Notes: generated by a model from the sequence alone, not told the origin. A DNA stretch of 64,000 nucleotides from IMGVR_UViG_3300035703_000009:1-64000, one strand, 5' to 3'; shown: positions 15,396-51,799, counted from the stretch's first letter. Numbers and translations: made by a program.

Positions 15396-16544
15396 TTACG
15401 CTAAAATGAGATCAAATGCCGAGTCTGAAAAGTATTGAGCGAGCATGGAATTAAAGCTCACAAAGGTTAAAGAAGAATCTCGAATCGAGAGGAAGAGGTA
15501 AAGGTCATTGATGTCTTTCACATCAAGCAAGAGTCGAGCCGATTGGGGATATTTCTTCTTTAGGTCGCTTATCAGCTTGGTCCACAAGAAGACTTGATAT
15601 CCCTGCTTCAGAAGCTCAATCGATTGCTGCTTACCGGCCTTGTCGTTGTCGAAGAGAATACGAGAGTTCTTTTTGGTGACCAAGTTACCGAGTAAGGCCT
15701 TGCTCTTTGTCACGCCGGTGGTGGCGATCGAGTTGTCAAGGAACATCGAATCGATCTGGCCCTCAGTAATAATTATGGGACGCGAGAAGTCAACGTTCAG
15801 CACGTTGAAGTAGTTATTTAACGAGTCGATTTCTTGAATCAGGCTGTCCTCCAGGTCCCTCACGAGGCCGTTCTTTTTGAGTTCAGAATAGTTCTTGATG
15901 TTGTACTTTGGTCCGGGCATGGAATCATCGAGCTTACGTAGGGCAAAGCCCAGCATTCGGCCCGACTTGAGGTCTAGGTTGAATAAGTACACCTTGTCCT
16001 GTCGAGAGTCATAATAACAACTCGACTCAAACACAGGTAGACTGTCAATCTTACGCTTTTTGACGAATCGGCCGACTGGGCTCTCAGGATCGGCCTCACT
16101 GCAAGGTAACAGAGAAAACCTCTCGACTAGGTCATCAAACATTAGCAGTTTCTGACCGATCTCACGATTGATGAGAAGCTCTATTAAAAAGCCTCTCTTC
16201 TTTAGCGTGGTCTCAGGCTTGAACTCTACTCGCTTCTTCTCTAACCCAGGTAGGGTCAAGTTATACTTGGTTGAAAAGTGGGAGATGAACTTTGCAAGCG
16301 GCACCCACACCATGCAACCGTCGTTGTAACACTTATAGGTATGGGTTTTGAGGTAGAGGTTACCTCGTTTCTTGTGTGAATCGGATGCGGAGTCGCCACA
16401 GTAAGGGCAGGCAATGTTTATCTTGTCTCCGTCTGACTCATATATCTCTTGCTTAGTCAACTCGTTTGGAAACCTTCGCTTCAGTACTGCCTTACAGAAC
16501 TGTTGCAGAGAGTAGTCGGTCTTCAGGTCCAGTTGGTTATTCAT
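15396..16544 (-). CDS. gp61: DNA primase (T4 gp61-like)
   Basis: Zinc finger CPYCGDS...YKCYNDGC and TOPRIM motifs ITEGQIDSMF and FDND; likely start MNNQLD at 16544. Confidence 0.88.
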   Translation of the reverse strand: MNNQLDLKTDYSLQQFCKAVLKRRFPNELTKQEIYESDGDKINIACPYCGDSASDSHKKRGNLYLKTHTYKCYNDGCMVWVPLAKFISHFSTKYNLTLPGLEKKRVEFKPETTLKKRGFLIELLINREIGQKLLMFDDLVERFSLLPCSEADPESPVGRFVKKRKIDSLPVFESSCYYDSRQDKVYLFNLDLKSGRMLGFALRKLDDSMPGPKYNIKNYSELKKNGLVRDLEDSLIQEIDSLNNYFNVLNVDFSRPIIITEGQIDSMFLDNSIATTGVTKSKALLGNLVTKKNSRILFDNDKAGKQQSIELLKQGYQVFLWTKLISDLKKKYPQSARLLLDVKDINDLYLFLSIRDSSLTFVSFNSMLAQYFSDSAFDLILA

Positions 16545-17973
16545 CGTCAGTGTCATCTTCTCCATTTTCAGCCTCGACTAGTGCGGCTTGTTTCTTCTTA
16601 GTGAGTCGTTTAATGTATTTGTCCAGCTCAAACTTCGGCACGATCACCGAGTTTAGGCCGTACTTTGTGATGGTCGCAAGGTACTCTGGAAAGTCATCCT
16701 CTGAGACTTGAGTTTCAGGATTACCGATTATCTTCCAGAACTTTTGTGGAGTCTCAATGTATTCTAGAGAGTCTTGGTTGACCACATAAAGCGGATAGAT
16801 CTGATCATCCGTGAGATCTTTTTTAGACTTAACAGTCACAACTTCGACTGCTCTTTTTAGATGCGTGTCGATTGAGCTCATCTTCATCGCGACGAGGAGT
16901 CGATTGATGGGTTCGACGATTAAGGTAAAGAATTGTTGGTCACGATCCATAGGCGGAGCGAGCTCAGTAGGATAATTTTCAGGAGCATAGGCAAATACAT
17001 CAAAGTTGTGCTCGTTTGGAGCGCAATAGTAGAACTTGATCTTGTCCTTTTCGCGAATGAGCGAGTACTTTTGGTTGAGTCCGCTCTTAAGCAGAAGATA
17101 GTTATAGTAAGCCGATGCTCGAGGATAGATTGAGATACCCTTCTTAAGGTTTAGGGTCGTAATGTCCTCGACATACTTGTTATAGACTCGCACGTTAAAG
17201 TTAAAGGCTAATTCAGTAGGGTGGAGTTCCATGAACTCTTCCTTAAGAGCTTGTAGCTTGGGAATGAGGTCACGCTCAATATTCAGCTTCTTACCGATCT
17301 CGAGGATGTATTCATCTAGCTTGATCAGGTTCTTACGAGCCCAGTCAGGATAGGAACCTTTGATCGGTTCTAAGCCCTTGATGACTAGGTAACGTTTTTC
17401 TTTAGGCATCAGTGCCAAGTTAGGATTCGGATCGTAAGCTACCTTGATCGCATAGTTCTTTTTCTTGAGCCAGATGCCATACTCAGACAGGTTCTCAAGC
17501 TTGAACTTGAGACGGTTCTTCGTGTTGAAGATCTTTCCGTACTTTTCAAAGCACTGGTCAAAGTATTTCGATAGTCTGTGATGGTCGATGGCGACACAAA
17601 TCGCTAGGGCTTCTTCACGAGTGAATGAAGCGCCTTCTATCGAATCGATAGCTGATTCAAACTGCACGTAAATGGAGTCAGTATCAGTGTAGATTGCAGC
17701 TTCACGCTCGATCTTATTGATCTTGTATCCGTCGATTTTCAATATCTGGTGAAGCTCAGTATCAAGGTGCCACTTTTCTTGAAAGTAGTAGTTCACTGCC
17801 TTGATGGAAAACTTGATCAAGTCTTGGCCCTGTAAAGTTATAGATTGGGCGATGTCTGGGTTGTAAAAATAGAACCACTTGTTACCAAAGGCTCCATAGA
17901 TTGAGTTAATTAAGATCTTGACTGCGTTTTGCTTAAGGTCTAACTTTTTGATCTGCTTTGTTATGTCTTCCAT
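16537..17973 (-). CDS. family B DNA polymerase, C-terminal subunit of a split polymerase
   Basis: Starts at motif B (KILINSIYGAFG) and contains YTDTDS, KKKNY and KGLE; no exonuclease domain or motif A. Confidence 0.88.
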   Translation of the reverse strand: MEDITKQIKKLDLKQNAVKILINSIYGAFGNKWFYFYNPDIAQSITLQGQDLIKFSIKAVNYYFQEKWHLDTELHQILKIDGYKINKIEREAAIYTDTDSIYVQFESAIDSIEGASFTREEALAICVAIDHHRLSKYFDQCFEKYGKIFNTKNRLKFKLENLSEYGIWLKKKNYAIKVAYDPNPNLALMPKEKRYLVIKGLEPIKGSYPDWARKNLIKLDEYILEIGKKLNIERDLIPKLQALKEEFMELHPTELAFNFNVRVYNKYVEDITTLNLKKGISIYPRASAYYNYLLLKSGLNQKYSLIREKDKIKFYYCAPNEHNFDVFAYAPENYPTELAPPMDRDQQFFTLIVEPINRLLVAMKMSSIDTHLKRAVEVVTVKSKKDLTDDQIYPLYVVNQDSLEYIETPQKFWKIIGNPETQVSEDDFPEYLATITKYGLNSVIVPKFELDKYIKRLTKKKQAALVEAENGEDDTDDE

Positions 17974-22624: not shown

Positions 22625-23185
22625 ATGATTACTCAACTTGACATATATGACTTTGACGAGACGTTAGTCAGAGCTCCAAGCTATACAAACAAAAAAACAG
22701 TAGAAAGAGCTCATCCTGAGCATAATTTTGACACGCCGTATGCCTTTTACGATCACTCAAAGTCCCTGTGTGAGGACTTACACCACATACAGCTCATTGC
22801 ACCAGTATATGAGTGTTGGGGTCAGGCAAACCAAAACCCATCGGCAATCACAGCATTGGTCACGCACAGAGTAGAAAGCCTAGCGGATGAAGTAAAGGAC
22901 GTGTTGAACAGACGTGGCGTATCAATGGACTACTACTTCTTTTATGGAAGGGCTATCCCAAAGTTCAAAGCGATTGAGGAACTGCTCGAAAGGTTTCCAA
23001 ACATCAAGAAAGTAAGGATATTTGATGACTCATACGAACAGATCGACATCTACTTGACATACATTAACATCATCAAAGAAATAGACCATGACATTGAATA
23101 TGAGTTGTGGGCAGTAGACAAGACCAAGATATTTAAAGTAAACTCGCTAAACATTAGCGAACCTAAACGTATAAGTCTGATATGA
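22625..23185 (+). CDS. HAD-superfamily phosphatase (RNA-repair 'Swiss army knife'-like)
   Basis: DFDETL motif I, VTHR motif II, K, FDDS motif IV. Confidence 0.8.
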   Translation: MITQLDIYDFDETLVRAPSYTNKKTVERAHPEHNFDTPYAFYDHSKSLCEDLHHIQLIAPVYECWGQANQNPSAITALVTHRVESLADEVKDVLNRRGVSMDYYFFYGRAIPKFKAIEELLERFPNIKKVRIFDDSYEQIDIYLTYINIIKEIDHDIEYELWAVDKTKIFKVNSLNISEPKRISLI

Positions 23186-23778
23186 TAGTGATGATAGAAG
23201 GCCCACGTAACGTCGGCAAGACCACACTTATGTCCTCTTTTCTTGAAAAGAACAAGGATTCTAACGTGATCTATTACAAGTTTCTCTTTGCAAAGTACAT
23301 CGATCAGTTTAACATGCGAGACCAGGAATCTGGACCAGGCATGCACTACTTTAGCTTAGGCAACATACTTAGCATCTTTGAGCTTAATCAGACTCTATTT
23401 AAAGACAAGATCATCTTATTTGACCGATGCATCCACTCAGCCTATGTCTGGGCGATCTATCGAGAAAGGTTAGGTCGTGAAAAGTTGTTGGCTGAATACT
23501 CAAAGATACTCAACAGTGAGCTCTACACCGATTGCTCTACCTTTTACATCAATCGTCGAGAATCTATCAAGACTAAAACTAGAGGAAAGGACTTATTTGA
23601 TAACTTTGAAAGTCATGATAAAGAGTTGGCCCTGTTTGAAGAGCTGCTCGACTTAAACATGAAACCCGTCTCAGACGCCAATAGAGGAAATCACTTTGTG
23701 AAGTTCATCAATGATTTTAACGATGAAAGCATTAGAGATTTCAACTACGTACTTGGTGACTTGATAAAGAGAGGGTAG
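23182..23778 (+). CDS. P-loop nucleotide kinase (dNMP/thymidylate kinase-like)
   Basis: EGPRNVGKTT Walker A; LFDR...S.YV. Confidence 0.8.
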   Translation: MIVMIEGPRNVGKTTLMSSFLEKNKDSNVIYYKFLFAKYIDQFNMRDQESGPGMHYFSLGNILSIFELNQTLFKDKIILFDRCIHSAYVWAIYRERLGREKLLAEYSKILNSELYTDCSTFYINRRESIKTKTRGKDLFDNFESHDKELALFEELLDLNMKPVSDANRGNHFVKFINDFNDESIRDFNYVLGDLIKRG

Positions 23779-23787
23779 TTTGCCTTA

Positions 23788-23794
23788 ATAAATA
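23788..23794 (+). promoter_or_regulatory. late promoter ATAAATA
   Basis: 19 nt before ATG 23813. Confidence 0.7.
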
Positions 23795-23812
23795 ATAAAA
23801 AACCAAGTAAGG

Positions 23813-24382
23813 ATGCGTAAAGAACTTAGATCCTTTGACCAATATTTAGTCGAACAAGCGGAGACAGCAGTCGCTAACCGTCCGTTAAAAGGATATACTG
23901 CCGAACAAATGATCACCAGGATCGGAGAACTAATGGAAGTTCTATCTGATGACATTCGATTTGGAGTTCCATCTGACACTCTTGGTAGAGTCACTACTTA
24001 TCGTGATGCAAACGGTGCCATCCAAAAGATCCAAGACATGCAGCACTACTATTCAAGCAAGGGCGAAGAAGTTCGCTTCTATGCATGGTCAATCAGTTAT
24101 TCAGGTAGCTGGAAGGCGACCAAGAATCTAAAGAGTAAAATCGAGGCTGCTGGAGGGTTTGGAGAAGAGAAGCTAAATATGAATCTTAAAAAGATCATAG
24201 ACTACTTTACTGAGAACGCAGAGGACTCCGACAACGTTCGTAGCATATCGATCAGCATGGACGCAGAGAGCATTCGCAAGGCCATGCAAAAGCCTGCTGA
24301 AAAACCAGAAGCCGCTGAGACTCCAGCGCCGACTGAAACCGCTAAATCTGAAGAAAAACCAGCTGAAACACCGGCTGAATAA
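23813..24382 (+). CDS. putative internal head protein
   Basis: N-terminus MRKELRSFDQYLVEQ; Pro/Ala/Glu-rich tail. Confidence 0.7.
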   Translation: MRKELRSFDQYLVEQAETAVANRPLKGYTAEQMITRIGELMEVLSDDIRFGVPSDTLGRVTTYRDANGAIQKIQDMQHYYSSKGEEVRFYAWSISYSGSWKATKNLKSKIEAAGGFGEEKLNMNLKKIIDYFTENAEDSDNVRSISISMDAESIRKAMQKPAEKPEAAETPAPTETAKSEEKPAETPAE

Positions 24383-24385
24383 TCT

Positions 24386-26296
24386 ATGGCAGGAATAAAC
24401 AACTTACGAGAAATACGCGACAAGCGCGGGGATGACTTTTTAAATGGCATGATGAATAATTACGTCATCATCAATGAGAAGGTCGATGGCACATTCTTTG
24501 GAGTAAAAAAGACTAAAGGAGACCTATTTAAGTACTTCAAGAAATCGGGAGAGATCAGCTATGTCGATCGAGTGCTGATGAAGTACTACAACCACGTGAT
24601 CGCATATTTTGAGTCGATTCCTCTCGAGAAGAGGCAACGTATTCCAACAAATTTCTTTTTTGGATTCGAGTACTTGACCAAACGTGACGCAGCGGCAAGC
24701 CGATACTCAAGGATGCCAAAGAATGGCTTGGTTCTTTCCTACATCCATAAGTTAGATGATGCTGGAAACGTCATTGCTACAGTTCAAACAAAAGAACATC
24801 TTGATAGATGGGCGGACTATCTAGGAGTAGAGAGACCGCCGATAATCTTTGAAGGCAAGCTCGACGACGAACAAAGAGCCGAGATACTTGAGTTCGTCTA
24901 TGCACCAAACGATAAGTTATACGAAAAATTCAAGACCAAGTCCTTTACCAAGTACATCATCTCGGTTCTAAACAAGGATTATGAGTCGGCCTTCTTAAAG
25001 AACTCTAAGGAAGCTGGAATCGAAGGAATCATTTTTAGGTTCTATGATCAGAACTCTGAAAACCCAGAAGCAAACGTCTTCCTAGCAAAGTTGATAGATC
25101 CGCTATTTCAAGCAAAGGTAAAAGAAGGCGAGCCTGCTCGTAAGAATTCCTCGCAAGACTATATCTGGCTGATCGTCATCGACCTAATGAACCACTTTGA
25201 GATGTATGACCTTTCCGCATTAAAGGAAATGGCAAGCACACCAGGATCCTTTGAAGAAAAGTACGTGCAAATCATCAATTCCATATTTAAAGACTTTATT
25301 AAACAATACGCTGGCAAGTATGCAGGTCTGCATCTAGAGGTTCCAGAATACTTAAATCGACCTGAGTTCAACCTTGATTTTAGCCTAATCCAGGATCCAG
25401 AAGTAAAGAAGTTGGTCGAATCCAGCGAGACCTATGCTGAGATCTATAAGATCTTGCTCAACTTTTTCAGAAAGGCTCGTAAGAAATCGACTTCGGGTTT
25501 CTTCACCAACGAGTTACTGACTCAACTCAACCTCATCGTCGCAAAGATTCGTAACGTGATCATGGGAGACGAGGTGTATGAGGGACTCTTCCCAAGCTTT
25601 AGCGAGTTTGTGGGATCAGCAAACGATGAGTACATGCTGAGCGAGAAAGAAGTCGCTGAGCGCAATAGCAAAAAAGTCGAGGCTAATGAGGTCAATGTTC
25701 TAATTGGAAGCTTTCAGCCAGTGACGATGGGTCACATCAAAGCGGCAAAGAAGCTAAAGGAAAAGAACGGGTTACCGTGCGTCTTTGTTGCGATAAAGCC
25801 TCAATCGCCCACCGCAAAGTCACCTTTTTCTCCACGCTTAACTAAAGCACTATTAGACAAGGTGCAACAGGAGTTTAACGACCTGATAGTCGACGTCAAG
25901 ATAGTCGACTCTGGCCAGATTGAGGATGTAGTAGGCACATTGACTCCAAACTATGAACCTGCTCTTTGGGGAACAACTGAGCGTCGTCTTAAGGACTTTG
26001 CTCTGCAATTAGATTACATCAAAAAAAGAAACATTCCAATAAGGCTCTCTTCGAACCTAAAGTTGACTGAATTACCAGTCTACGTTAGATCAGAAGAAGT
26101 TATTGCTGCCATAAAGAGCTCAGACTTTGCTGAATTCAAAAAGCTAGTGCCAATATCTGTCGCATCAGAGTTCTTTAACTTACAAAAAGAGCTCGGATCG
26201 AAGATTGATGAAGCGACTAATTCAATGCAGAAGATATTTGAATCCGCAGAGATCTCGATTGAGATCGAGGATCCAAAGCTAAAGGAATCGGACTAA
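24386..26296 (+). CDS. RNA ligase (Rnl2-like) fused to a HIGH-class nucleotidyltransferase domain
   Basis: Ligase motifs I EKVDGT, III FGFEY, IV EGIIFR, V LAKL; C-terminal GSFQPVTMGH (T/HxGH)...SPF...FKKLVP. Confidence 0.75.
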   Translation: MAGINNLREIRDKRGDDFLNGMMNNYVIINEKVDGTFFGVKKTKGDLFKYFKKSGEISYVDRVLMKYYNHVIAYFESIPLEKRQRIPTNFFFGFEYLTKRDAAASRYSRMPKNGLVLSYIHKLDDAGNVIATVQTKEHLDRWADYLGVERPPIIFEGKLDDEQRAEILEFVYAPNDKLYEKFKTKSFTKYIISVLNKDYESAFLKNSKEAGIEGIIFRFYDQNSENPEANVFLAKLIDPLFQAKVKEGEPARKNSSQDYIWLIVIDLMNHFEMYDLSALKEMASTPGSFEEKYVQIINSIFKDFIKQYAGKYAGLHLEVPEYLNRPEFNLDFSLIQDPEVKKLVESSETYAEIYKILLNFFRKARKKSTSGFFTNELLTQLNLIVAKIRNVIMGDEVYEGLFPSFSEFVGSANDEYMLSEKEVAERNSKKVEANEVNVLIGSFQPVTMGHIKAAKKLKEKNGLPCVFVAIKPQSPTAKSPFSPRLTKALLDKVQQEFNDLIVDVKIVDSGQIEDVVGTLTPNYEPALWGTTERRLKDFALQLDYIKKRNIPIRLSSNLKLTELPVYVRSEEVIAAIKSSDFAEFKKLVPISVASEFFNLQKELGSKIDEATNSMQKIFESAEISIEIEDPKLKESD

Positions 26297-26360: not shown

Positions 26361-27932
26361 ATGAAGTATACAGAACTCGAAGAAGCTGACATAGATTACA
26401 TTTCTGAAATCTATTTCAACAAGGAAATTTCATGGGATCAGCGACTTCGCATGCTCTCTGAACGCTATAAAAGATCTGAGCGCACGATTCAACACTGGAT
26501 CTCAAAGCTAGGATTTAGCACCAAACAACAAGAAGAATCTCCGCAGCTGATCGCTGCCAAGTCCCGAGAGCTAGATCGAAGCAAATCGAAGTTCATCATC
26601 ACCTGGGCACAAAACAATACTGACGTTCACGAAAGGTTTATCACCAACCTAGAAGCATATGCTGCTGAGCTGGATGCCAGCATTCACGTGATTGCAGGTA
26701 GATACAAGAACCCAACATCTGTGTTTACCGATCGCAAGTATGACGTATGGTCAGACCGAATCGAAAGGTACTTGGACGCGAATCGTCATGATGTGCATAA
26801 GTACGTCTCAATCATGTCTGACGTGAAGATACAGCCGACTGCGGTCGATCCGATGACGGGCTTACAGGGCATGAGCGGTATCAATTCCTGCGTTTTTGGT
26901 TCGCCTAAGGTGCAGATGGAAATGATCCCAGTTTTGACTGGCAACAGACCAAAGATGATGGTAACTACTGGCGCATGCACAGTGAAGAACTACACCGACT
27001 CAAAGGCCGGTAAAAAGGGCGAGTTTCATCACACTCTAGGATTTGCCATCATTGAGATCAAGGACGATGACACTTTTTTCATAAGACAAGTAACAGCTTC
27101 AGATAACGGAGACTTTAACGACCTATACTTTAACGTAAAGTACTCTGAAGGTGAGGGTAAGAGCTCAATTAGTCGTAACTCATCGATCGCTGCACTAGTG
27201 TTAGGCGATCTACACTATGGTCAACATGATCCTCAAGTATTAGACCAATCATTTAACCTGATGGCCAAGTTAAGTCCCGATCACGTCATCATCCACGACG
27301 CGTTTGACGGAACCTCAATCAACCATCATGAGACCAAGGACCCATTTGTCCAATACCAAAAGGAAATGGCTGGCACAAACTCGCTAAAGAAGGAGATAGA
27401 TGCCTTGTTGCTTGGCCTTGAAGACTTTCAAGACTATAACGTGGTCATCGTTCGCAGCAACCACGACGACTTCATCGATCGTTGGTTAAAGGACACCGAT
27501 TGGAGAAAGACTGTCACCCCAAAGAACTCTCTCGAATACATGCAATACTCGGCAGCCATACTAAGCGGCCAAGCTCCAAACGGAGTCATTCCATACCTGA
27601 TCAACCAAAAGTTTCCTCACTTTAAGACACTAGGCAGAAACGATAGCTACCTGGTGAAGGGCTGGGAACTAGGTCAGCATGGAGATATCGGTTCGAGCGG
27701 AACCAGGGGATCGCTATTACAGTTACGCAAGCTCAACACCAAGATAGTGGTAGGCCACTATCATGCTCCAGGCAGAAAAGACGGTGCTTTGTCAGTTGGA
27801 ACCTCGACCAAGCTTCGCCTAAACTATAACCTAGGCGCTAGCAGTTGGTTACAGTCTCACGTAATCATCCATCAAGACGGAAAAGCACAACACATTAACT
27901 TTATTAACGGCGAATTCACTACTCTAGAATAA
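26361..27932 (+). CDS. HTH + calcineurin-like metallophosphoesterase (T5 A1-like)
   Basis: N-terminal HTH (SERTIQHW); GDLH, HD.FD, SNHD, QHGD and GHYH metal-binding motifs. Confidence 0.75.
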   Translation: MKYTELEEADIDYISEIYFNKEISWDQRLRMLSERYKRSERTIQHWISKLGFSTKQQEESPQLIAAKSRELDRSKSKFIITWAQNNTDVHERFITNLEAYAAELDASIHVIAGRYKNPTSVFTDRKYDVWSDRIERYLDANRHDVHKYVSIMSDVKIQPTAVDPMTGLQGMSGINSCVFGSPKVQMEMIPVLTGNRPKMMVTTGACTVKNYTDSKAGKKGEFHHTLGFAIIEIKDDDTFFIRQVTASDNGDFNDLYFNVKYSEGEGKSSISRNSSIAALVLGDLHYGQHDPQVLDQSFNLMAKLSPDHVIIHDAFDGTSINHHETKDPFVQYQKEMAGTNSLKKEIDALLLGLEDFQDYNVVIVRSNHDDFIDRWLKDTDWRKTVTPKNSLEYMQYSAAILSGQAPNGVIPYLINQKFPHFKTLGRNDSYLVKGWELGQHGDIGSSGTRGSLLQLRKLNTKIVVGHYHAPGRKDGALSVGTSTKLRLNYNLGASSWLQSHVIIHQDGKAQHINFINGEFTTLE

Positions 27933-36986: not shown

Positions 36987-37266
36987 CTATCTTAATGTTG
37001 TTTTCTTCTTTGAACTTTTCCCAAGCAGCCGCATCCATCATGTCTGGAAAGCGTGAGCCTCCATTGCAAGACTCCTTTACATAGATCTTGCCGGGAAAGG
37101 AACATCCGCAATTGATGCAAAATTCATATACGGCACAGTCATTCTTACAGACCTGTGAACGATAAAAGACTTGCTCTTTTTCGTGCTTAGGCAAGAGGTG
37201 GAACTGGTCGCCCAGCATCTTTAGGTTGCCCTCAATGAACTGGTAGATTTTCTTAGGGGTTATCAT
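36964..37266 (-). CDS. Cys-rich hypothetical protein
   Basis: CxxxC...CxxCGC...C metal-binding pattern. Confidence 0.65.
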   Translation of the reverse strand: MITPKKIYQFIEGNLKMLGDQFHLLPKHEKEQVFYRSQVCKNDCAVYEFCINCGCSFPGKIYVKESCNGGSRFPDMMDAAAWEKFKEENNIKIDDLLHRH

Positions 37267-38153
37267 TTTCCTCTTAATGTTTTTCTTTTGTCAAGTTCAG
37301 ACTTAAGAACTTCTCTGGGGCCGTAACCTCCTCTAGCGCTTTCGATATCACGAATGCTCTTTATCAGCTTAATGAGTCCTTGGGGCTCGACTGAAGCTAT
37401 TTGATCACTGCCCCAAAGAGAACGATCGACTGTGATGTGACGTTCGATCCAGGTGGCTCCAAGCAAAGTTGCAGCAATGGTCGTAGTAAGTCCAAACTCA
37501 TGACCGGAATACCCCACCGCAAATGACTTTGGAAAGTCTTTACCCTTACTGATGTGGCTCAAGTAGGTGATATAGTCGAGATTAAGTTCATGATTTGGAG
37601 CAGGATAAGTAGAGTTAGTATGAAAAACTACATCAGGTCTACATTCAACTACTGCTAAGTCTATTTCCTCTTGTGTGCTCATACCGGTGGAGATAAGGAG
37701 AAAGTCTGAACAGTCTCGTGCGTATTGAATTAGCTCGAGGTCATGGATTAGGGCCGATGGTATTTTCATCATCACTCCCCACTTGCCATTAGGTAAGAGG
37801 GTCTCAAATTTTCGCGCAAAGTCAACTGACTTTTTGTCCCACACTGAGGTAAACCAACGCATTTTTCGAGCTTCGCAATAGTCATCTATTTCCTTGTACT
37901 GTTCATGGGAAAGCTCAATGTCGAGTTTATATTGAAAGTAAGTGGTCGCCTCTTTGCGCCAGGGCACCCTTTTTGTTTTTGACCTTTCCGCTTGAGGAAC
38001 ACACGATTCAGGATCACGTTTTTGAAACTTTACATAATCAACTCCGGAAACTGCCGCAATATCAATAAGTTTTTTTACATTATTGATGAATTCCTTCGTA
38101 GAGGAACCATATGCATAATTTATGCCTATTTCTGCAATTATCGTGGTTTTCAT
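37263..38153 (-). CDS. neuB: N-acetylneuraminate/nonulosonate synthase lacking the C-terminal AFP/SAF domain
   Basis: IIAEIGIN, VKFQKR, KIPSA, ISTGMS, STYP, GYSGHE, IERHIT and GSDQ; start revised to 38153 (ATGA overlap). Confidence 0.92.
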   Translation of the reverse strand: MKTTIIAEIGINYAYGSSTKEFINNVKKLIDIAAVSGVDYVKFQKRDPESCVPQAERSKTKRVPWRKEATTYFQYKLDIELSHEQYKEIDDYCEARKMRWFTSVWDKKSVDFARKFETLLPNGKWGVMMKIPSALIHDLELIQYARDCSDFLLISTGMSTQEEIDLAVVECRPDVVFHTNSTYPAPNHELNLDYITYLSHISKGKDFPKSFAVGYSGHEFGLTTTIAATLLGATWIERHITVDRSLWGSDQIASVEPQGLIKLIKSIRDIESARGGYGPREVLKSELDKRKTLRGK

Positions 38154-39184
38154 GAGTTTACTAGAGAGTTTATCCAAGAAAAAGTTTTTTTCATTCCATC
38201 TACTAAAGGCTGGGAGACTTTCCAACCCATTTTTTCTTCATAAAGTTGGTTGTCTGAATTTCTACCTTTGACTCCAATTGGACACTTGAATCCGTACTTT
38301 TTCTTGAATTCTTCGCCTTCTATATTTTCAATAGAGATATTTTTATTTGAGATTAAGATCGCCATTTCAGCAAGTTGATTAATTGTAACCATCTCTTCAG
38401 AACCGATGTTGACAGGTCCTAAGAATCCATCTTGTCTCATGAATCTAAGAACTGCTTCAACACAATCATCAATGTACAAAAAAGAGCGAGTCTGCATACC
38501 GTCTCCCCAAACTTCTATGATACCTCCGCTCTGGGTTTCTGCTACTTTGCGGCACATTGCAGCGGGAGCCTTTTCCTTACCTCCTTTCCAAGTTCCATAG
38601 GGGCCAAATATGTTATGGAACCTGGCAATTCGCACGTCTAGCCCGTAGTTTCTATGAAAAGCTAAATAAAGTCGCTCACTAAAAAGTTTTTCCCAACCGT
38701 ATTCTGAGTCAGGATTTGCTGGATATGCTGATGACTCTTCACAATTTGGGTTATTTGGATCGAGCTGATTGTGCTCTGGGTACATGCACGCAGAAGAGCT
38801 ATAGAAAATCTTCTTTACTGATTTTTTGACGGCTTCATGTGCAACATTTAAGTTTATTAGAGATGAGTTATGCATTACATTAGCATCGTTATTACCTGTA
38901 AAAATATAACCAGCTCCTCCCATGTCAGCAGCAAGTTGATAAACTTCATCGAAAGATTTTTCTCTGTCCCCTTCAAAAGTTTGATTAGGAGATAACATGA
39001 CACAACTTACAAACTTAGGGTCTCTAAGATCACCTAAAATAAACTCATCACAAAAATCATCTTTATCAAAGTACTCATGAACTTTAATGTCAACTGCTCT
39101 GACCCAAAAGCCTTCTTCCTTTAATTTTTTAGCCAGGTGGCCTCCTATGAAGCCTCCTCCACCAAGTACTAGTGCCTTTTTCAT
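38150..39184 (-). CDS. NAD-dependent epimerase, GDP-mannose 3,5-epimerase-like
   Basis: GGGGFIG, QLAADMGGAGYI, YSSSACMYPE, YGWEK, RFHNIFGP and EKAPAAMCRK. Confidence 0.88.
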   Translation of the reverse strand: MKKALVLGGGGFIGGHLAKKLKEEGFWVRAVDIKVHEYFDKDDFCDEFILGDLRDPKFVSCVMLSPNQTFEGDREKSFDEVYQLAADMGGAGYIFTGNNDANVMHNSSLINLNVAHEAVKKSVKKIFYSSSACMYPEHNQLDPNNPNCEESSAYPANPDSEYGWEKLFSERLYLAFHRNYGLDVRIARFHNIFGPYGTWKGGKEKAPAAMCRKVAETQSGGIIEVWGDGMQTRSFLYIDDCVEAVLRFMRQDGFLGPVNIGSEEMVTINQLAEMAILISNKNISIENIEGEEFKKKYGFKCPIGVKGRNSDNQLYEEKMGWKVSQPLVDGMKKTFSWINSLVNS

Positions 39185-39921
39185 AATTTTCTTTTATTTT
39201 TTTCAAAAATTTTGTCTCCTGGAAAGGAGGCTGTATTTATGAATCCTTTTTGAGTTAAGAAAGCCATCATTTCATCTAGTGAATTTCCTGCCTGAACCGT
39301 ATGCTTTTGGTCCCACTCAATTATAAGAGTAAGGTTATTTGCTTTTTCTAAAAAATCGCTCATACCTTTTAATACATTCATCTCAAACCCTTGAACATCA
39401 ATTTTTATTAACCCAATATCGTAACTTGGATTTTCAAGTAAAAACGTGTCTAATTTTTTACAGACAACTTGCTCAGTAATGTAATTTTTAGAATTCATAT
39501 TAGAGATCGCAACCTCTTTGTTAAAGGAAGCATTGTCTGAGCAATAAGGAATGAATATTTCTTGAGTAGTATCAGAATCAAATAGAGCAAAGTTTAGAAT
39601 TTGCATGTTTTTACAAGAGTTTGCACTTTTACTCTGCTCTAACAATGAAACATTCATACTAAGCGGCTCAACTGATAGTACGGAATAACCATATTTTTCA
39701 GCAGGTATTGAAAACATTCCGCAATTTGCACCAACATCTAACACAGACCTAGATTTATCCATTTTTCTTACAAGATTAAGCATCATAGTGTAATCCTTCA
39801 TCTCATTGAGGTTTGTTCTAGCTTTTATTTTATAGTCAGTGACAAAATAGTCAAAATTAAAGATTACGTATTCAAAATTAGCGTTTTTAAAAATAAATCT
39901 TTCAGGTTTAGTAGAAATCAT
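39181..39921 (-). CDS. FkbM-family methyltransferase
   Basis: LDVGANCG, VEP and IKIDVQGFE. Confidence 0.85.
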   Translation of the reverse strand: MISTKPERFIFKNANFEYVIFNFDYFVTDYKIKARTNLNEMKDYTMMLNLVRKMDKSRSVLDVGANCGMFSIPAEKYGYSVLSVEPLSMNVSLLEQSKSANSCKNMQILNFALFDSDTTQEIFIPYCSDNASFNKEVAISNMNSKNYITEQVVCKKLDTFLLENPSYDIGLIKIDVQGFEMNVLKGMSDFLEKANNLTLIIEWDQKHTVQAGNSLDEMMAFLTQKGFINTASFPGDKIFEKNKRKL

Positions 39922-39932
39922 GAGCGTTTAGA

Positions 39933-40715
39933 TTATTTGAAGTAAGAATCATAATTAAAATCAGATAACTTATTTGAATAGTAATGAGGTCCTATTATTT
40001 TTAAGAATGCGTTTTGGTCCTTGATTCCACCGTCAGTGTCGCTAGCATTAGTCAACTGATTAGCCATACCGGGAGTAAATGAATAGCAGTTTAACGAAGG
40101 CTCAATTAGTATGAATGAGTGATCTATTGCTCGAGATCGGTGCACACACGCGTCCAGTAACTCTACTATTTTAGGTATTGAACTTGGATTAATTAAATAT
40201 GAGTGGCCGCAAAAAGAACCATATACTCGGTGTATGTACTTGATTCCAGTTAACTCATAATCCCCTCCTTTATTCCAACGACTGGGATCATTGTTTAGAT
40301 GATAAAAAGAAGAAAGGAAAAATATGTCCCAATCTAGGTTAAATTTTTCTTCAATGTACTTAAATCTTTCGTTAAAATCTTCGCAGAGAATGACATCATC
40401 TTCAAATATTCCAAGTATCTTATCACTGCTAGTATCGTATTCTTTAATTAGAGTGTAGTGGGAGCGATAGCATTTTTTCTGTCCTTCAGAAAAGGCTGAA
40501 CTAAATGGTATGCTGCAGCCAGATAAGTCTTCGTACGCTCTAAATTTTTTAGCATCGATGTTATGCTTTTTTAATTCAGAATTAACGTGGGCAAGTCTGT
40601 CTACTCTTCTGTCTAAATTTATGAAATAGAAGTCAATGTTCTTTCTTTCTATTTTTAAGAAGGTTTTTGTGTGAGCCATATACTTATGTATTATTTTTGT
40701 CTTATTTTTATCCAT
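39933..40715 (-). CDS. GT25 glycosyltransferase
   Basis: INLDRRVDR, CYRSH and IFEDD. Confidence 0.82.
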   Translation of the reverse strand: MDKNKTKIIHKYMAHTKTFLKIERKNIDFYFINLDRRVDRLAHVNSELKKHNIDAKKFRAYEDLSGCSIPFSSAFSEGQKKCYRSHYTLIKEYDTSSDKILGIFEDDVILCEDFNERFKYIEEKFNLDWDIFFLSSFYHLNNDPSRWNKGGDYELTGIKYIHRVYGSFCGHSYLINPSSIPKIVELLDACVHRSRAIDHSFILIEPSLNCYSFTPGMANQLTNASDTDGGIKDQNAFLKIIGPHYYSNKLSDFNYDSYFK

Positions 40716-41530
40716 CTTTCTGGAGTCAAAGCATTAGTATCAAAGCTTTGATAGTCTGGTCCAAACCACTCATCTGGATAAGGACAGTAAACAAGCTTAT
40801 CCGTAGATTTTGATAAATATGCAGCCCACCATGAAAAAGTACTGTTTGCAATAATGAAGTGGTCACACAAAGACTGAGCTATGAAGTCACTAATATAATC
40901 ATCGCTATAGTCAAAATAAGTAATAGGTTTTTGATATTTTTCAAATTTTCCAAATATGAATTCTTTAGTATCTTCATTATCAGTAAAGATGCATATTTCA
41001 TCGATGCTTTTTTTAGATAAAATGTCTTCTATACTTCTTTGATAGTATTCTAAAGTAAGAACTGGGTGTCTATGCTCGACACCTTTATGCCCTCCTCCAA
41101 ATTTACGATCATACTGATCACCCCAGCGTATGTGAATCGAAAGTTTCTTTGAGTTCTGATTCATTTTACTATTAACCTTTTCTATAATAGTTGGGTCAAA
41201 GACCAAATACTCAAGTACTTTTTTTTCATAATCATCAAAAAACAAAGAGGACTGAAAATATCCTACTATTTCTACTAATTTATCACTAGTTGGAATATTG
41301 TGGATTCCAAATTTAGATTCCTTATGAGTCAGTGAAATATTTGACTTTATTTTGACAGAGGAACGTGTAGGTAGATTTGGAAAAAGCTTTGCGTGCTCCC
41401 ACTCAGATGGAACAAAAAAGCTACTGTTGTTCTTAATTGCTTGACCAATAATAGTCGCAACTCTAAACAATTGATTGCCAAGGCGTCCATGACGATGGTC
41501 TAATATTTGCAAAGTAGTGAAACCTTTCAT
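40691..41530 (-). CDS. GT11 alpha-1,2-fucosyltransferase-like
   Basis: GRLGNQLF, GYFQS, HIRWGD and IIANSTFSWWAAYL. Confidence 0.9.
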   Translation of the reverse strand: MKGFTTLQILDHRHGRLGNQLFRVATIIGQAIKNNSSFFVPSEWEHAKLFPNLPTRSSVKIKSNISLTHKESKFGIHNIPTSDKLVEIVGYFQSSLFFDDYEKKVLEYLVFDPTIIEKVNSKMNQNSKKLSIHIRWGDQYDRKFGGGHKGVEHRHPVLTLEYYQRSIEDILSKKSIDEICIFTDNEDTKEFIFGKFEKYQKPITYFDYSDDYISDFIAQSLCDHFIIANSTFSWWAAYLSKSTDKLVYCPYPDEWFGPDYQSFDTNALTPERWIKIRQK

Positions 41531-41546
41531 ATTTAAAAATTGTTTT

Positions 41547-42464
41547 TTATGAGTTTTGTACTACACTAGACTCAATGAGTTTAGACGGAAGCATTATTTT
41601 CGGTTCACTGAAACTTGCACTTTTAAAAAATTTATCATTATAATTGATAGTGTTTCGAGTAAGTGTGTGATGAAAGATTCCATCGTAATAGCTTTGGCTA
41701 TGATATACACTAGCTACATAGCTAAGAGAACTCTTTGACATTATGAATGCATCTGATTTGATTATTCTATCTAGCGTTTTTACAGGGTGCTCATCTAAAT
41801 GAAAAAATACTTTTCCATGCGCATTAAGTTCATTAAAATATTGAAAATCTAAAATGTCACCTTGAGAGTAAATATGAAATTGAATATTTTTATTAGTGGG
41901 CATGATTTCTTTAACGAAGTCAATGGAGCCGTTAGGAATATTGGGGTAATAATATCTACGCCATTCGGAGAAATCAGTGTCCTCGTCAGTAGCTCGTCTA
42001 ACATGAATAGAAATAATGAAATCTGAATTTTCTTCTCTTGGGTATTTTTTAATTAACTCTTCTTGAATATTGTTTAATAGAAAAATGTTATGGTCAGTTA
42101 GTGTCTTTAGATCTGCCCAGTGAAGATTAACTATTGATTTTTCTAAAGAGGAAGGATTATATATTAAAGTGTCTAACAATTCATATACACTCAGCTCTAC
42201 TACAGGAAGCGAATCAGACTCAGTAATCGAGTCTCTTAATAAAAAATCTCGAGTATATTCAAAAAAATGAAGATCCCATTCTTCTTGAGAAAAATTAAAT
42301 TTTTGAATGTGTCCAACGTTTTTCATTGGAGTTAATAAAAAATCAACTCCATAGTGTTTAGCCAATGCATAGCCGCCTAATTGAAGTTGAAAGGCAGAAC
42401 CAAAACCTTCGTTGTGTCCAGGAAGGTATAAATTTGAACAATCTATCTCACATTTTATTATCAT
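41547..42464 (-). CDS. GT11/GT23-like GDP-sugar transferase
   Basis: EGFGSAFQ, IHVRR, FHIYSQG and MSKSSLSY. Confidence 0.65.
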   Translation of the reverse strand: MIIKCEIDCSNLYLPGHNEGFGSAFQLQLGGYALAKHYGVDFLLTPMKNVGHIQKFNFSQEEWDLHFFEYTRDFLLRDSITESDSLPVVELSVYELLDTLIYNPSSLEKSIVNLHWADLKTLTDHNIFLLNNIQEELIKKYPREENSDFIISIHVRRATDEDTDFSEWRRYYYPNIPNGSIDFVKEIMPTNKNIQFHIYSQGDILDFQYFNELNAHGKVFFHLDEHPVKTLDRIIKSDAFIMSKSSLSYVASVYHSQSYYDGIFHHTLTRNTINYNDKFFKSASFSEPKIMLPSKLIESSVVQNS

Positions 42465-44366: not shown

Positions 44367-44376
44367 CGTAGTTCAT

Positions 44377-49052: not shown

Positions 49053-49055
49053 TAT

Positions 49056-51765: not shown

Positions 51766-51799
51766 TTAGATAAATTATTTTAAAACCTAGTCTTCAATT

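What the first reader, a model, noticed from the sequence alone, without database searches (positions are those of the whole stretch)
24386..26296. Late-expressed RNA-ligase / HIGH-nucleotidyltransferase fusion
Seen: intact covalent nucleotidyltransferase motifs I, III, IV and V, a helical linker containing a targeting-like FPSFSEFV peptide, then a cytidylyltransferase/NMNAT-like domain starting near 25691 (FQPVTMGH). It is co-transcribed from the late promoter at 23788. Inference: a virion-delivered, possibly protease-processed two-enzyme protein linking nucleotide-cofactor synthesis (for example NAD) to ligation or adenylylation.
Basis: partly seen in the sequence, partly recalled or inferred. 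Interest (0 to 1): 0.62.

Follow-up and report, generated by a model that had tools for sequence, protein, structure and literature searches.

The report
Phage RNA-ligase fused to adenylyltransferase
A jumbo phage gene encodes an RNA-ligase-like enzyme joined to an NMNAT/PPAT-type adenylyltransferase; the same unstudied fusion is found across huge phages, and many copies have lost the lysine that ligases normally cannot work without.

Summary
The ORF 24386-26296 (+, 636 aa) is real and the domain call is right. Residues 1-250 fold as an ATP-dependent RNA-ligase adenylyltransferase domain (T4 Rnl2/NgrRnl, Z about 11). Residues 255-395 form a helical subdomain. Residues 432-605 form a HIGH-superfamily adenylyltransferase of the NMNAT/NaMNAT/PPAT class.

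The fusion is a large, unstudied family of at least 502 clusters. It occurred once per record in 11 of the 12 jumbo or huge phage records searched (56-462 kb).

The promoter at 23788 is one of 21 copies of ATAAATAATAAAAA. This T4-late-like element also precedes tail-sheath, head-protease and portal genes, so late expression is plausible.

- **Virion delivery:** distant relatives carry the gene inside replication and nucleotide-metabolism modules.
- **Protease processing:** FPSFSEF-like sequences also lie at or near the C-terminus of most standalone ligase relatives.
- **NAD link:** these phages carry complete NARP1- or NARP2-type NAD pathways, or none, regardless of the fusion.

The motif I lysine (K32, present here) is missing in 42 of 243 relatives. 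The state changed at least 17 times, and every loss is in a multi-domain form. The HIGH motif stays 95-98% conserved. This raises an untested idea: the HIGH domain adenylylates the 5'-phosphate end and the ligase domain only seals it.

The parts
23788..23801 (+). Promoter-like element ATAAATAATAAAAA. Its core ATAAATA matches 7 of 8 bases of the T4 late -10 element TATAAATA. It lies 12 nt before the ATG of ORF 23813.
   Evidence: The window has 8 exact copies plus 1 near copy against 0.05 expected. The genome has 21 sites, each close upstream of a same-strand ORF; measured distances are 8-16 nt. Downstream genes include tail sheath, head maturation protease, the portal operon and the baseplate cluster.
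23813..24382 (+). Upstream ORF of 189 aa with no family match. It ends in an acidic P/E/A/T-rich tail, and its stop lies 3 nt before the fusion's ATG.
   Evidence: A 61%-identical relative keeps a similar ORF in the same position.
24386..26296 (+). The fusion gene: 636 aa, RNA-ligase-like module plus HIGH adenylyltransferase.
24386..25129 (+). Adenylyltransferase (NTase) domain of the ATP-dependent RNA-ligase fold, aa 1-248. Motif I EKVDG is at 24476-24490, Ia KKSG follows, III FGFEY is at 24659-24673, IV EGIIFR at 25022-25039 and V LAKLID at 25082-25099.
   Evidence: VIA-align gives Z 11.2-11.5 against NgrRnl and T4 Rnl2 (rmsd 3.5 A, about 190 aa), Z 9.9 against Trl1-LIG and Z 9.4 against T4 Rnl1. 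Foldseek gives probability 1.0. hhalign to T4 Rnl2 maps the motifs. Pfam RNA_ligase scores 21.4 bits, below the cut-off of 27, but relatives reach 32-33 bits.
25148..25570 (+). All-helical C-terminal subdomain of the ligase module, aa 255-395.
   Evidence: The model is confident with helices only. The Trl1 ligase-domain alignment extends to residue 325. Standalone ligase-only relatives also have it.
25577..25612 (+). Conserved aromatic motif YEGLFPSFSEFV at the end of the ligase module. The looser family pattern is roughly [hydrophobic]-x-[ST]-F-x-[ED]-[FYW].
   Evidence: F405 is at least 90% conserved in A3. A strict pattern matched 26 of 87 diverse fusions. Similar sequences are visible by eye at or near the C-terminus of about 15 of 19 standalone forms. 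Model confidence is low here (pLDDT 58-70).
25679..26200 (+). HIGH-superfamily (Rossmann-like) adenylyltransferase domain, aa 432-605. GSFQPVTMGH is at 25706-25735, SPFSP at 25820-25834, WGTTERR at 25967-25987 and VRSEEV at 26084-26101.
   Evidence: Foldseek matches NadD 8aih, M. thermoautotrophicum NMNAT 4yp5/1m8g and PPATs, with target TM-scores mostly 0.6-0.7 and probability 1.0. The family profile hits NadM, archaeal NMNAT, NadD and PPAT in PDB at about E 1e-7. Pfam CTP_transf_like scores 21.1 bits against a cut-off of 21.
26201..26296 (+). Variable acidic C-terminal tail, predicted with low confidence, plus the stop codon.
22625..23185 (+). Neighbouring HAD-type phosphatase with an intact DxDxT motif (DFDET). 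It may heal RNA 3' ends. The adjacency is specific to this lineage.
   Evidence: Pfam HAD_SAK_1 scores 25.8 bits against a cut-off of 25.6. The sequence was checked. No homologue was detected beside the fusion in distant relatives.
23182..23778 (+). Neighbouring P-loop kinase with Walker A motif GPRNVGKT. Its start overlaps the HAD ORF by 4 nt. It could act on polynucleotides or on nucleotides; this is unresolved.
   Evidence: Only weak hits were found: AAA_14, dNK, AAA_28 and phrog_761 thymidylate kinase.

Best explanation
The gene encodes a cytoplasmic two-enzyme protein of the phage's nucleic-acid and nucleotide metabolism. It is not a virion cargo protein.

**Shown**
- The N-terminal 400 aa form an ATP-dependent RNA-ligase module: an Rnl2/Rnl5/Trl1-like adenylyltransferase domain plus a helical subdomain.
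- In this phage the module keeps the AMP-accepting Lys32 and motifs Ia, III, IV and V.
- The C-terminal 200 aa form a HIGH-superfamily adenylyltransferase of the NMNAT/NaMNAT/PPAT class. It has an intact T-x-G-H motif and a PPAT/NMNAT-like K-S-P-F-S block.

**Inferred**
- The ligase module seals 3'-OH/5'-PO4 RNA breaks by the classical three steps: Lys-AMP, then AppRNA, then phosphodiester.
- In this lineage it may be helped by the adjacent HAD phosphatase and P-loop kinase acting as end-healing enzymes.
- The HIGH domain uses ATP to adenylylate a phosphomonoester acceptor, giving an A-5'pp-X product. The acceptor is unknown.
- Comparative genomics argues against the domain being the phage's NAD-salvage NMNAT.
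- The fusion persists down to about 25% identity, so the two activities probably serve one pathway. Counter-defence RNA repair or processing is the leading guess.
- Transcription probably starts at the T4-late-like element at 23788, with possible read-through from upstream.
For: - Folds.
- Motif mapping onto T4 Rnl2.
- Family profile hits to NMNAT, NadD and PPAT.
- Relatives pass the Pfam cut-offs for RNA_ligase (32-33 bits) and for full-length CTP_transf_like (31.8 bits).
- Family size and conserved architecture: at least 494 close and 502 diverse clusters. One copy in 11 of the 12 phage records searched, and two in the twelfth.
- Replication and nucleotide-metabolism context in four distant lineages.
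- The genome has a separate canonical ATP-dependent DNA ligase.
- The HAD_SAK_1 neighbour has an intact DxDxT motif.
- Jumbo phages commonly pair ATP-grasp RNA ligases with SAK-type HAD phosphatases and kinases for tRNA repair (PMC7824862).
- Promoter motif and the genes it precedes.
Against: - No biochemical data exist for any family member.
- The motif I lysine is missing in 17% of relatives, with at least 17 state changes on the tree. In much of the family the ligase module therefore cannot work classically.
- Motif V lacks the second lysine in every member.
- P0001 itself scores below the Pfam RNA_ligase cut-off.
- The HAD and kinase neighbours are not detectably conserved beside the gene in distant relatives, and the kinase looks more like a nucleotide kinase.
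- In the P0001 clade the second HIGH motif reads V(K/R)SEE rather than the ISxT(K/R) of the wider family.
- No RlaP, KptA or tRNA genes were found to back up an RNA-repair programme.
- RNA rather than DNA as the substrate is inferred from fold similarity only.
Confidence: 0.5

Rival explanations
1. Division of labour in ligation. The HIGH domain transfers AMP from ATP directly onto the 5'-phosphate of the broken strand, making A5'pp5'N-RNA. This is the same chemistry as NMN plus ATP giving NAD. The ligase-like domain then only binds the App-end and catalyses step 3. The lysyl-AMP route becomes optional, which would explain why it is repeatedly lost.
For: - K32 is lost in 42 of 243 members, with at least 17 state changes on the tree. 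It is lost in 0 of 19 standalone forms. F443-Q444-P445 and H450 remain 95-98% conserved.
- K32-less proteins keep most of the rest of the pocket: K52 98%, G157 100%, F219 98%, K/R218 90%, K235 90%, D238 88%. Decay is concentrated at E31, E95 and D/E213.
- Motif I lysine mutants of MthRnl, T4 Rnl2 and Chlorella virus ligase still seal pre-adenylylated ends (PMC3514331).
- The fusion persists down to 25% identity.
Against: - No HIGH-family enzyme is known to adenylylate a polynucleotide end.
- Loss of K32 and loss of the HIGH motif are not demonstrably exclusive: 152/36/5/1 observed, with about 1.1 double losses expected by chance.
- The link between fusion status and K loss is weak: Fisher p = 0.05, and the phylogenetically independent pairs test has no power.
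- A few K32-less forms (P0165, P0185, P0206) have no detectable HIGH domain.
- The domain-docking prediction gave no verdict.
Confidence: 0.2
2. The C-domain is an NMN/NaMN adenylyltransferase that makes NAD, coupled to ligation or to counter-defence against NAD-depleting systems.
For: - The best sequence and structure matches include archaeal and NadM-type NMNATs and NadD. The family consensus GRFQPFxxGH...PF[ST] resembles the NMNAT signature.
- The genome encodes a Nampt-family enzyme.
Against: - The Nampt-family gene sits with a Prs/Adps homologue. This is the NARP1 arrangement, which needs no NMNAT.
- The same pairing occurs in G001, G002, G004 and G014.
- LR756500 has Nampt plus its own 388-aa HIGH protein as well as the fusion.
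- G003, G005 and G006 are complete, lack Nampt, and still have the fusion.
- PPATs match as well as NMNATs do.
- The profile alignment to NMNAT stops around residue 513, so the rest of the domain is not matched at sequence level.
- ATP-dependent ligases do not use NAD.
Confidence: 0.12
3. The ligase-like module is mainly a nucleic-acid or nucleotide-binding module that directs the HIGH enzyme to an RNA or DNA substrate. One possibility is adenylate-forming RNA modification of the TmcAL or citrate-lyase-ligase type. Another is a replisome-linked role at RNA-DNA junctions, with the C-terminal aromatic motif acting as a partner-binding peptide.
For: - The nucleophile is recurrently lost while the HIGH motif is constant.
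- The HIGH domains of some relatives show weak Citrate_ly_lig, HIGH_NTase1 and MJ0951 similarities.
- The gene is consistently placed beside gp32, UvsW and PolB.
- A short aromatic motif lies at the end of the ligase module, including at or near the C-terminus of most standalone forms.
Against: - 83% of members, including this one, keep K32 and all the ligase motifs.
- The citrate-lyase-ligase and TmcAL similarities cover only the generic terminal motif.
- No partner was identified or tested.
- A canonical DNA ligase already exists in the genome.
Confidence: 0.13
4. A virion-packaged, protease-processed enzyme that is delivered into the host with the DNA.
For: - The upstream promoter element is of the type that precedes structural genes.
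- Tail and baseplate genes follow a few kb downstream on the same strand.
- The phage encodes a head maturation protease.
Against: - In four distant lineages the gene is in the replication and nucleotide-metabolism module.
- The proposed 'targeting' peptide is a family-wide ligase motif that standalone forms also carry.
- No N-terminal targeting sequence or cleavage evidence was found.
- The same motif also precedes non-structural operons such as PhoH and UvsW.
Confidence: 0.04

Closest known systems
T4 RNA ligase 2 (Rnl2) and Naegleria/Deinococcus Rnl5 nick-sealing RNA ligases (Pfam PF09414)
   Same: The adenylyltransferase-domain fold matches at Z about 11.3. The E-K-x-[DH]-G motif I, motif Ia K(K/R)xG, motif III Glu, motif IV acidic residue and motif V Lys fall in the same order and positions.
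   Different: - Sequence identity is only 12-15%.
- Motif V has a single Lys, and motif IV has Arg.
- The helical C-subdomain differs from the Rnl2 C-domain.
- The protein is fused to a HIGH adenylyltransferase.
- The nucleophile lysine is not invariant across the family.
Fungal tRNA ligase Trl1 (LIG domain) and T4 Rnl1 with Pnkp (tRNA healing and sealing)
   Same: - The ligase domain is followed by a helical subdomain. The structural alignment to Trl1-LIG extends to residue 325, Z 9.9.
- Like Trl1, it is a multi-enzyme polypeptide.
- This phage has a HAD phosphatase and a P-loop kinase next door, as in the T4 Pnkp logic.
   Different: - The fused partner is a HIGH NTase, not a kinase or CPD.
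- The HAD/kinase adjacency is not conserved in distant relatives.
- No 2'-phosphotransferase (KptA/Tpt1) is present.
Archaeal/NadM-type NMNAT, bacterial NadD and PPAT (CoaD): small HIGH-superfamily adenylyltransferases (Pfam PF01467)
   Same: The Rossmann-like fold matches with target TM-scores mostly 0.6-0.7. The protein has the GxFxPx(T/H)xGH motif, and a K-x-P-F-[ST] block after strand 2. An (R/W)G...R...DF...QL-like segment resembles PPAT; this last comparison was made by eye from my memory of the E. coli CoaD sequence.
   Different: - The domain is fused behind a ligase.
- In this clade the second nucleotide-binding motif reads V(K/R)SEE.
- No acceptor-specific residues could be matched.
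- Genomic context does not tie it to NAD or CoA pathways.
Phage NAD reconstitution pathways NARP1 (Adps+Namat), NARP2 (Nampt+Nmnat) and NARP3 (NadR+PnuC)
   Same: These are phage-encoded systems, and NARP2 and NARP3 use HIGH-type NMNAT chemistry. The same genome carries a NARP1-like cluster.
   Different: The fusion occurs regardless of which NARP genes are present. None of the described systems contains a ligase domain.
Bacterial Pnkp/Hen1 and HNH-Rnl2 fusions in jumbo phages (PMC7824862)
   Same: They are precedents for RNA ligase domains fused to other enzymes in repair or conflict systems.
   Different: Their partners are kinase/phosphatase or HNH nuclease domains. A ligase-HIGH fusion is not listed in that survey.

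Membership tests
ATP-dependent RNA ligase (covalent nucleotidyltransferase superfamily; Rnl2/Rnl5-like, PF09414) | Adenylyltransferase-domain fold | tested here: met
   Model pLDDT is 88.7. Foldseek matches T4 Rnl2 at E 5.6e-7 with probability 1.0. VIA-align gives Z 11.2-11.5, rmsd 3.5 A, about 190 aa.
ATP-dependent RNA ligase (covalent nucleotidyltransferase superfamily; Rnl2/Rnl5-like, PF09414) | Motif I lysine nucleophile (KxDG) | tested here: met
   K32 in EKVDG aligns with Rnl2 K35. Across the family it is not invariant: it is absent in 42 of 243 members, with at least 17 changes.
ATP-dependent RNA ligase (covalent nucleotidyltransferase superfamily; Rnl2/Rnl5-like, PF09414) | Motifs III, IV and V with their catalytic Glu, Glu/Lys and Lys-x-Lys | tested here: inconclusive
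   E95, E213, R218 and K235 are present. The second motif V lysine is absent (position 237 is V or I in the whole family), and motif IV has Arg.
ATP-dependent RNA ligase (covalent nucleotidyltransferase superfamily; Rnl2/Rnl5-like, PF09414) | Score above the Pfam gathering threshold | tested here: not met
   P0001 scores 21.4 bits against a cut-off of 27. Relatives P0196 (33.2 bits) and P0122 (32.0 bits) pass.
ATP-dependent RNA ligase (covalent nucleotidyltransferase superfamily; Rnl2/Rnl5-like, PF09414) | Self-adenylylation and joining of 3'-OH/5'-PO4 RNA ends | not testable with these tools
   This needs a biochemical assay.
HIGH-superfamily nucleotidyltransferase (PF01467; NMNAT/NadD/PPAT class) | Rossmann-like fold of the small adenylyltransferases | tested here: met
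   Model pLDDT is 90.2. Foldseek matches 8aih, 4yp5, 1m8g and PPATs at E about 1e-7 to 1e-6, with target TM-scores mostly 0.6-0.7.
HIGH-superfamily nucleotidyltransferase (PF01467; NMNAT/NadD/PPAT class) | (H/T)xGH signature after strand 1 | tested here: met
   The sequence is GSFQPVTMGH. F443, Q444, P445 and H450 are 95-98% conserved in distant relatives.
HIGH-superfamily nucleotidyltransferase (PF01467; NMNAT/NadD/PPAT class) | Second nucleotide-binding motif (ISxTxxR / SxxxxR type) | tested here: inconclusive
   Distant relatives have I-S-[AS]-T-K. The P0001 clade has V-[KR]-S-E-E, with S569 conserved.
HIGH-superfamily nucleotidyltransferase (PF01467; NMNAT/NadD/PPAT class) | Score above the Pfam gathering threshold | tested here: met
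   P0001 scores 21.1 bits against a cut-off of 21, which is marginal. The relative in LR756500 scores 31.8 bits over the full profile.
NMN adenylyltransferase acting in phage NAD salvage (NARP2-type Nampt+Nmnat pair) | Acts as the NMNAT partner of a phage Nampt, shown by co-occurrence and no alternative route | tested here: not met
   Where no other HIGH gene exists, Nampt-family genes are accompanied by an Adps/Prs homologue (G000, G001, G002, G004, G014). LR756500 has a separate HIGH protein. G003, G005 and G006 have the fusion without Nampt.
NMN adenylyltransferase acting in phage NAD salvage (NARP2-type Nampt+Nmnat pair) | NMN/NaMN-dependent NAD synthesis activity | not testable with these tools
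   This needs an enzyme assay.
T4-type RNA healing-and-sealing system (Pnkp + Rnl) | A 3'-phosphatase and a 5'-kinase encoded with the ligase | tested here: inconclusive
   HAD_SAK_1 scores 25.8 bits against 25.6, with DxDxT intact. The P-loop ORF has a Walker A motif, but its family is unresolved. The linkage was not detected in distant relatives.
Virion-packaged or ejected phage proteins | Encoded in the structural module, or carrying a capsid-targeting or cleavage signal, or present in virions | tested here: not met
   Distant relatives place the gene in replication modules. The proposed peptide is a ligase-family motif. Virion presence cannot be tested here.

The most novel reading that the evidence does not exclude
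A lysine-independent, two-domain ligation mechanism. The HIGH (NMNAT/PPAT-like) domain adenylylates the 5'-phosphate of a broken RNA, or of an RNA-DNA junction, directly from ATP. This bypasses the lysyl-AMP intermediate that defines all classical polynucleotide ligases. The ligase-fold domain then performs only the sealing step. It would be a new way of making AppRNA and a new activity for the HIGH superfamily, present as a conserved gene of huge phages.
Probability: 0.2. Interest if true: 0.85.

Novelty: new variant of a known kind. Interest (0 to 1): 0.6.

Why it matters
Polynucleotide ligases are defined by a lysyl-AMP intermediate. This family has hundreds of sequence clusters, occurred in all 12 jumbo or huge phage records searched (56-462 kb), and is annotated in databases only as 'cytidyltransferase-like'.

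Its ligase fold is permanently joined to a second ATP-dependent adenylyltransferase, and the ligase nucleophile has been lost many times. Either this is a new bifunctional RNA-repair or counter-defence enzyme, or adenylyl transfer to the nucleic-acid end has been handed to a different enzyme fold.

Both options can be tested directly with simple assays. Natural K32-less members provide ready-made controls.

The work also corrects a tempting mis-annotation. NMNAT-like does not mean NAD salvage here, because these phages carry separate NARP1- or NARP2-type pathways.

Tried and rejected
- **Near-identical DNA:** megablast of 22-30 kb against annotated phages found nothing. A protein search found only six uncultured huge-phage genomes.
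- **Sequence-level PDB searches for the N-module:** both the single sequence and the 88-sequence profile gave nothing. Only fold comparison identified it.
- **Replicative DNA ligase rival:** weakened. A canonical ATP-dependent DNA ligase lies at about 174.2 kb and there is no LigA.
- **Orphan Nampt needing the fusion's NMNAT:** it looked promising. I rejected it after finding Adps/Prs homologues next to the Nampt-family genes.
- **Mutual exclusivity of K32 loss and HIGH-motif loss:** 152/36/5/1, not different from independence.
- **K loss against fusion status:** Fisher p = 0.05, and the phylogenetically independent pairs test has no power.
- **Conservation of the HAD and kinase neighbours:** none detected in distant relatives. 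The 421-430 aa ORFs upstream of the fusion there are not ligase paralogues either.
- **Rosetta-stone test:** the ORF after a standalone ligase turned out to be a second family copy, not a separate HIGH gene. Tandem copies occur in that lineage only.
- **Third domain of the 950-1290 aa relatives:** no Pfam, PHROG or PDB match. The Atlas gave only a weak restriction-endonuclease-like lead at 0.80.
- **Docking of the N and C domains (complex prediction):** no verdict, with scores 0.01, 0.50 and 0.00. This is not evidence either way.
- **Other markers:** KptA/Tpt1, RlaP and tRNA genes were not found.
- **Neighbour ORFs against PDB:** uninformative.
- **Constraints:** no alternative genetic code was needed.
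Full report
**1. What is there**

The window is the first 64 kb of a 207 kb IMG/VR viral contig, estimated 81% complete. It is a jumbo phage with T4-like core genes:
- UvsW-like helicase, a PolB fragment, primase, PhoH, portal and a gp5-like baseplate hub.
- A weak gp55-like small sigma ORF at about 114.0-114.4 kb.

The ORF 24386-26296 (+) encodes 636 aa, stored as P0001.
- EKVDG at 24476-24490.
- FGFEY at 24659-24673.
- EGIIFR at 25022-25039.
- LAKLID at 25082-25099.
- YEGLFPSFSEFV at 25577-25612.
- GSFQPVTMGH at 25706-25735. The first strand of the C-domain starts at nt 25691.

**2. Domain identities**

Single-sequence scans are weak:
- Pfam RNA_ligase scores 21.4 bits, below the cut-off of 27.
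- CTP_transf_like scores 21.1 bits against a cut-off of 21.
- PHROG 'RNA ligase' and 'cytidyltransferase' hits have E about 1e-3.

I built alignments from 88 diverse relatives per domain (A3 and A4) and folded each domain.

*N-module (aa 1-410, pLDDT 88.7)*
- Foldseek matches only polynucleotide ligases, and RNA ligases first: T4 Rnl2 at E 5.6e-7, then the Trl1 ligase domain, REL1, Rnl3, Rnl5 and T4 Rnl1.
- VIA-align superposes residues 1-247 on the adenylyltransferase domains of NgrRnl and T4 Rnl2 at Z 11.2-11.5 (rmsd 3.5 A, about 190 residues).
- Trl1-LIG scores Z 9.9, with the alignment running into the helical subdomain to residue 325. T4 Rnl1 scores Z 9.4.
- hhalign against T4 Rnl2 aligns INEKVDG with AREKIHG. 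This gives K32 = K35, E31 = E34, KKSG = KRTG (motif Ia) and E95 = E99.
- Some relatives pass the Pfam RNA_ligase threshold at 33.2 and 32.0 bits.

*C-module (aa 405-636, pLDDT 90.2)*
- It matches NadD, archaeal NMNAT and PPAT structures with target TM-scores mostly 0.6-0.7.
- Its family profile hits NadM, MJ0541 NMNAT, NadD and PPAT sequences at about E 1e-7.

FPSFSEF-like sequences appear at or near the C-terminus of about 15 of the 19 standalone forms, for example ...FQTFENFRLI and ...LTFKQFIK. A strict search pattern matched only 2 of those 19 and 26 of 87 diverse fusions, so the motif is loosely conserved. It belongs to the ligase module and is not a fusion-specific targeting or cleavage signal.

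**3. The family**

- The word-based search found at least 494 full-length relatives (57-99% identity, 610-646 aa) on contigs up to 275 kb.
- The exhaustive search found 502 clusters at 50% identity.
- Of the 149 diverse representatives listed, 87 have both domains by phmmer.
- Nineteen complete standalone ligase-only proteins are 371-429 aa long.
- Thirty-two representatives are 750-1290 aa long. Twenty of them share an unannotated third domain.
- IMG/VR holds 76 loci at 25-69% identity, on contigs up to 434 kb.
- Eleven of the 12 records searched have exactly one copy. One 56 kb fragment has two tandem copies.
- UniProt/BFVD names members only 'Cytidyltransferase-like domain-containing protein' or 'Uncharacterized'.
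- None of the papers I checked describes a ligase-HIGH fusion: the jumbo-phage comparative survey, the NARP1/2 preprint, the NARP3 paper and a freshwater jumbophage paper.

**4. An unexpected pattern: the ligase nucleophile is dispensable in many members**

I aligned 243 N-domains and 206 C-domains.
- K32 is Lys in 107 of 121 close relatives and 94 of 122 distant ones. The replacements are Q, N, R, L, V, D and M.
- On a tree built without the motif columns, the K/non-K state changes at least 17 times.
- All 42 losses are in multi-domain proteins, and none is in the 19 standalone ligases. The statistics are weak, though: Fisher p = 0.05, and the independent pairs test has no power.
- F443, Q444, P445 and H450 of the HIGH motif are 95-98% conserved even among distant relatives.
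- K32-less proteins keep most other pocket residues: K52 98%, D61 98%, G157 100%, F219 98%, K/R218 90%, K235 90% and D238 88%. Decay is concentrated at E31 (83%), E95 (48%) and D/E213 (81%).
- Published work shows that motif I lysine mutants of RNA and DNA ligases lose steps 1-2 but still seal pre-adenylylated ends (PMC3514331).
- NMNAT and PPAT chemistry (ATP plus a phosphomonoester giving A-5'pp-X) is formally the reaction that makes AppRNA. The HIGH domain may therefore supply the activated end. This is inference.
- Loss of K32 and loss of the HIGH motif are not demonstrably exclusive (152/36/5/1).

The protein in this window has K32, so it could work classically.

**5. Context and expression**

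The element at 23788-23801 is real.
- The window has 8 exact copies plus 1 near copy against 0.05 expected.
- The genome has 21 sites with at most one mismatch, each close upstream of a same-strand ORF. For the 17 where my ORF caller found the gene, the distance to the ATG is 8-16 nt.
- Its core is 7 of 8 bases of the T4 late element TATAAATA. That consensus is quoted from general knowledge.
- It precedes the tail sheath, the head maturation protease, the portal operon, the baseplate cluster and a structural-like protein.
- It also precedes the PhoH and UvsW operons and a regulator.

Late expression of ORF 23813 plus the fusion is therefore plausible. The two are 3 nt apart and no + strand terminator is predicted. 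Read-through from the HAD-kinase pair upstream is equally possible. After the fusion's stop codon come a small AT-rich hairpin and a sigma-70-like TTAAAA-18-TATAAT before the next gene.

Late timing does not imply packaging. In four independent distant lineages the gene lies among gp32, UvsW, PolB, dUTPase, RNR, thymidylate synthase and a FEN-type exonuclease.

In this lineage only, the gene is preceded by two possible end-healing enzymes:
- a HAD_SAK_1 phosphatase (25.8 bits against 25.6, DxDxT intact);
- a P-loop kinase of unresolved type.

**6. The NAD hypothesis, tested**

The genome has a Nampt-family gene at about 108.9 kb and only one other HIGH ORF. That ORF is 136 aa and sits with an APS kinase, a sulfotransferase and a GT9-like gene, which looks like a different pathway. 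This first suggested that the fusion could be the missing NMNAT. Further checks argue against it:
- A clear Prs/Adps homologue lies about 1.5 kb from the Nampt-family gene. This is the NARP1 arrangement, which needs no NMNAT.
- The same pair occurs in G001, G002, G004 and G014.
- LR756500 has Nampt plus its own 388-aa HIGH protein.
- G003, G005 and G006 are 92-100% complete and have neither gene.
- All of these records carry the fusion.

The fusion is therefore independent of the NAD reconstitution genes.

**7. Verdict**

- **Best-supported reading (about 0.5):** a cytoplasmic bifunctional enzyme of phage nucleic-acid metabolism. It combines a classical-looking RNA ligase with a HIGH adenylyltransferase whose phosphomonoester acceptor is unknown. 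The two probably act in one RNA repair or processing pathway.
- **Most interesting reading not excluded (about 0.2):** the HIGH domain makes the App-end and the ligase fold only seals.
- **Less likely:** NAD synthesis about 0.12, a targeting or replisome role about 0.13, and virion cargo about 0.04.

I rate it a new variant of known kinds and moderately to highly interesting, because it is widespread, unannotated and directly testable.

**Procedural notes**
- Complex prediction gave no verdict.
- The first Atlas call failed because the machine was busy.
- No other genetic code was used.

Noticed in passing
window 10176, 15373(-), 18110, 22574(-), 23788, 29876, 46216(-), 52852, 56626; 12 further sites in the rest of the genome: ATAAATAATAAAAA is a tightly positioned promoter-like element with 21 sites in 207 kb. 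Each lies close upstream of a same-strand ORF, at a measured 8-16 nt before the start. It resembles the T4 late -10 element. A gp55-like 132-aa ORF (G000:114025-114423) lies directly upstream of one site.
   Followed up: partly
outside the window, G000:C1 about 108.8-113.1 kb (- strand); loci L024, L104: A NARP1-like NAD reconstitution cluster. It holds a Nampt/Namat-family protein (512 aa), a Macro-like ORF, two nucleoside-2-deoxyribosyltransferase-like ORFs, a Prs/Adps homologue (294 aa) and a UvdE endonuclease.
   Followed up: partly
outside the window, G000:C1 about 182.1-184.4 kb (- strand); locus L011: A small HIGH nucleotidyltransferase (136 aa, GRYQSPHKGH...ISATEIRR) sits next to an APS kinase, a sulfotransferase and a GT9-like glycosyltransferase. 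This may be a sulfation or PAPS-type module in a phage.
   Followed up: partly
window about 37000-51800 (- strand): A low-GC block (31-36%, against about 44% elsewhere) holds about 16 co-oriented, overlapping ORFs, including a UDP-glucose dehydrogenase (45104-46204). It looks like an acquired glycan or sugar-modification island.
   Followed up: no
window 26361-27932 (+): The gene just downstream strongly matches phrog_1745 'DNA transfer protein' (T5 A1-like, E 5e-146) and has a metallophosphoesterase core. An AT-rich hairpin and a sigma-70-like TTAAAA-18-TATAAT precede it.
   Followed up: no
relatives P0122, P0124, P0134, P0150, P0159 and others (residues about 620 to the end): Relatives of 950-1290 aa carry a shared third domain of about 360-500 aa with no Pfam, PHROG or PDB match. 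The Atlas nearest named clusters are restriction-endonuclease-like at score 0.80, which is only a lead.
   Followed up: partly
L005 / IMGVR_UViG_3300010357_001192 (G020:3-1894): A canonical standalone ligase (P0196, 387 aa, passes PF09414) is followed immediately by a second, core-family copy that the contig end cuts off. These tandem paralogues were seen in this lineage only.
   Followed up: yes
window 16537-17973 (-) and relatives L002, L006: Family-B DNA polymerase appears to be split. Here a 478-aa ORF covers only the C-terminal polymerase part. Relatives have similarly separate PolB ORFs.
   Followed up: no
window 23813-24382 (+): The 189-aa ORF translationally adjacent to the fusion has no family match and ends in an acidic P/E/A/T-rich low-complexity tail. 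Close relatives keep it in the same position.
   Followed up: no
L003 7704-8969, L006 5705-6997: Huge-phage relatives share a conserved ORF of 421-430 aa with no family match, immediately upstream of the fusion (E 1e-88 between the two). It is related neither to the ligase family nor to the window's HAD and kinase ORFs.
   Followed up: partly
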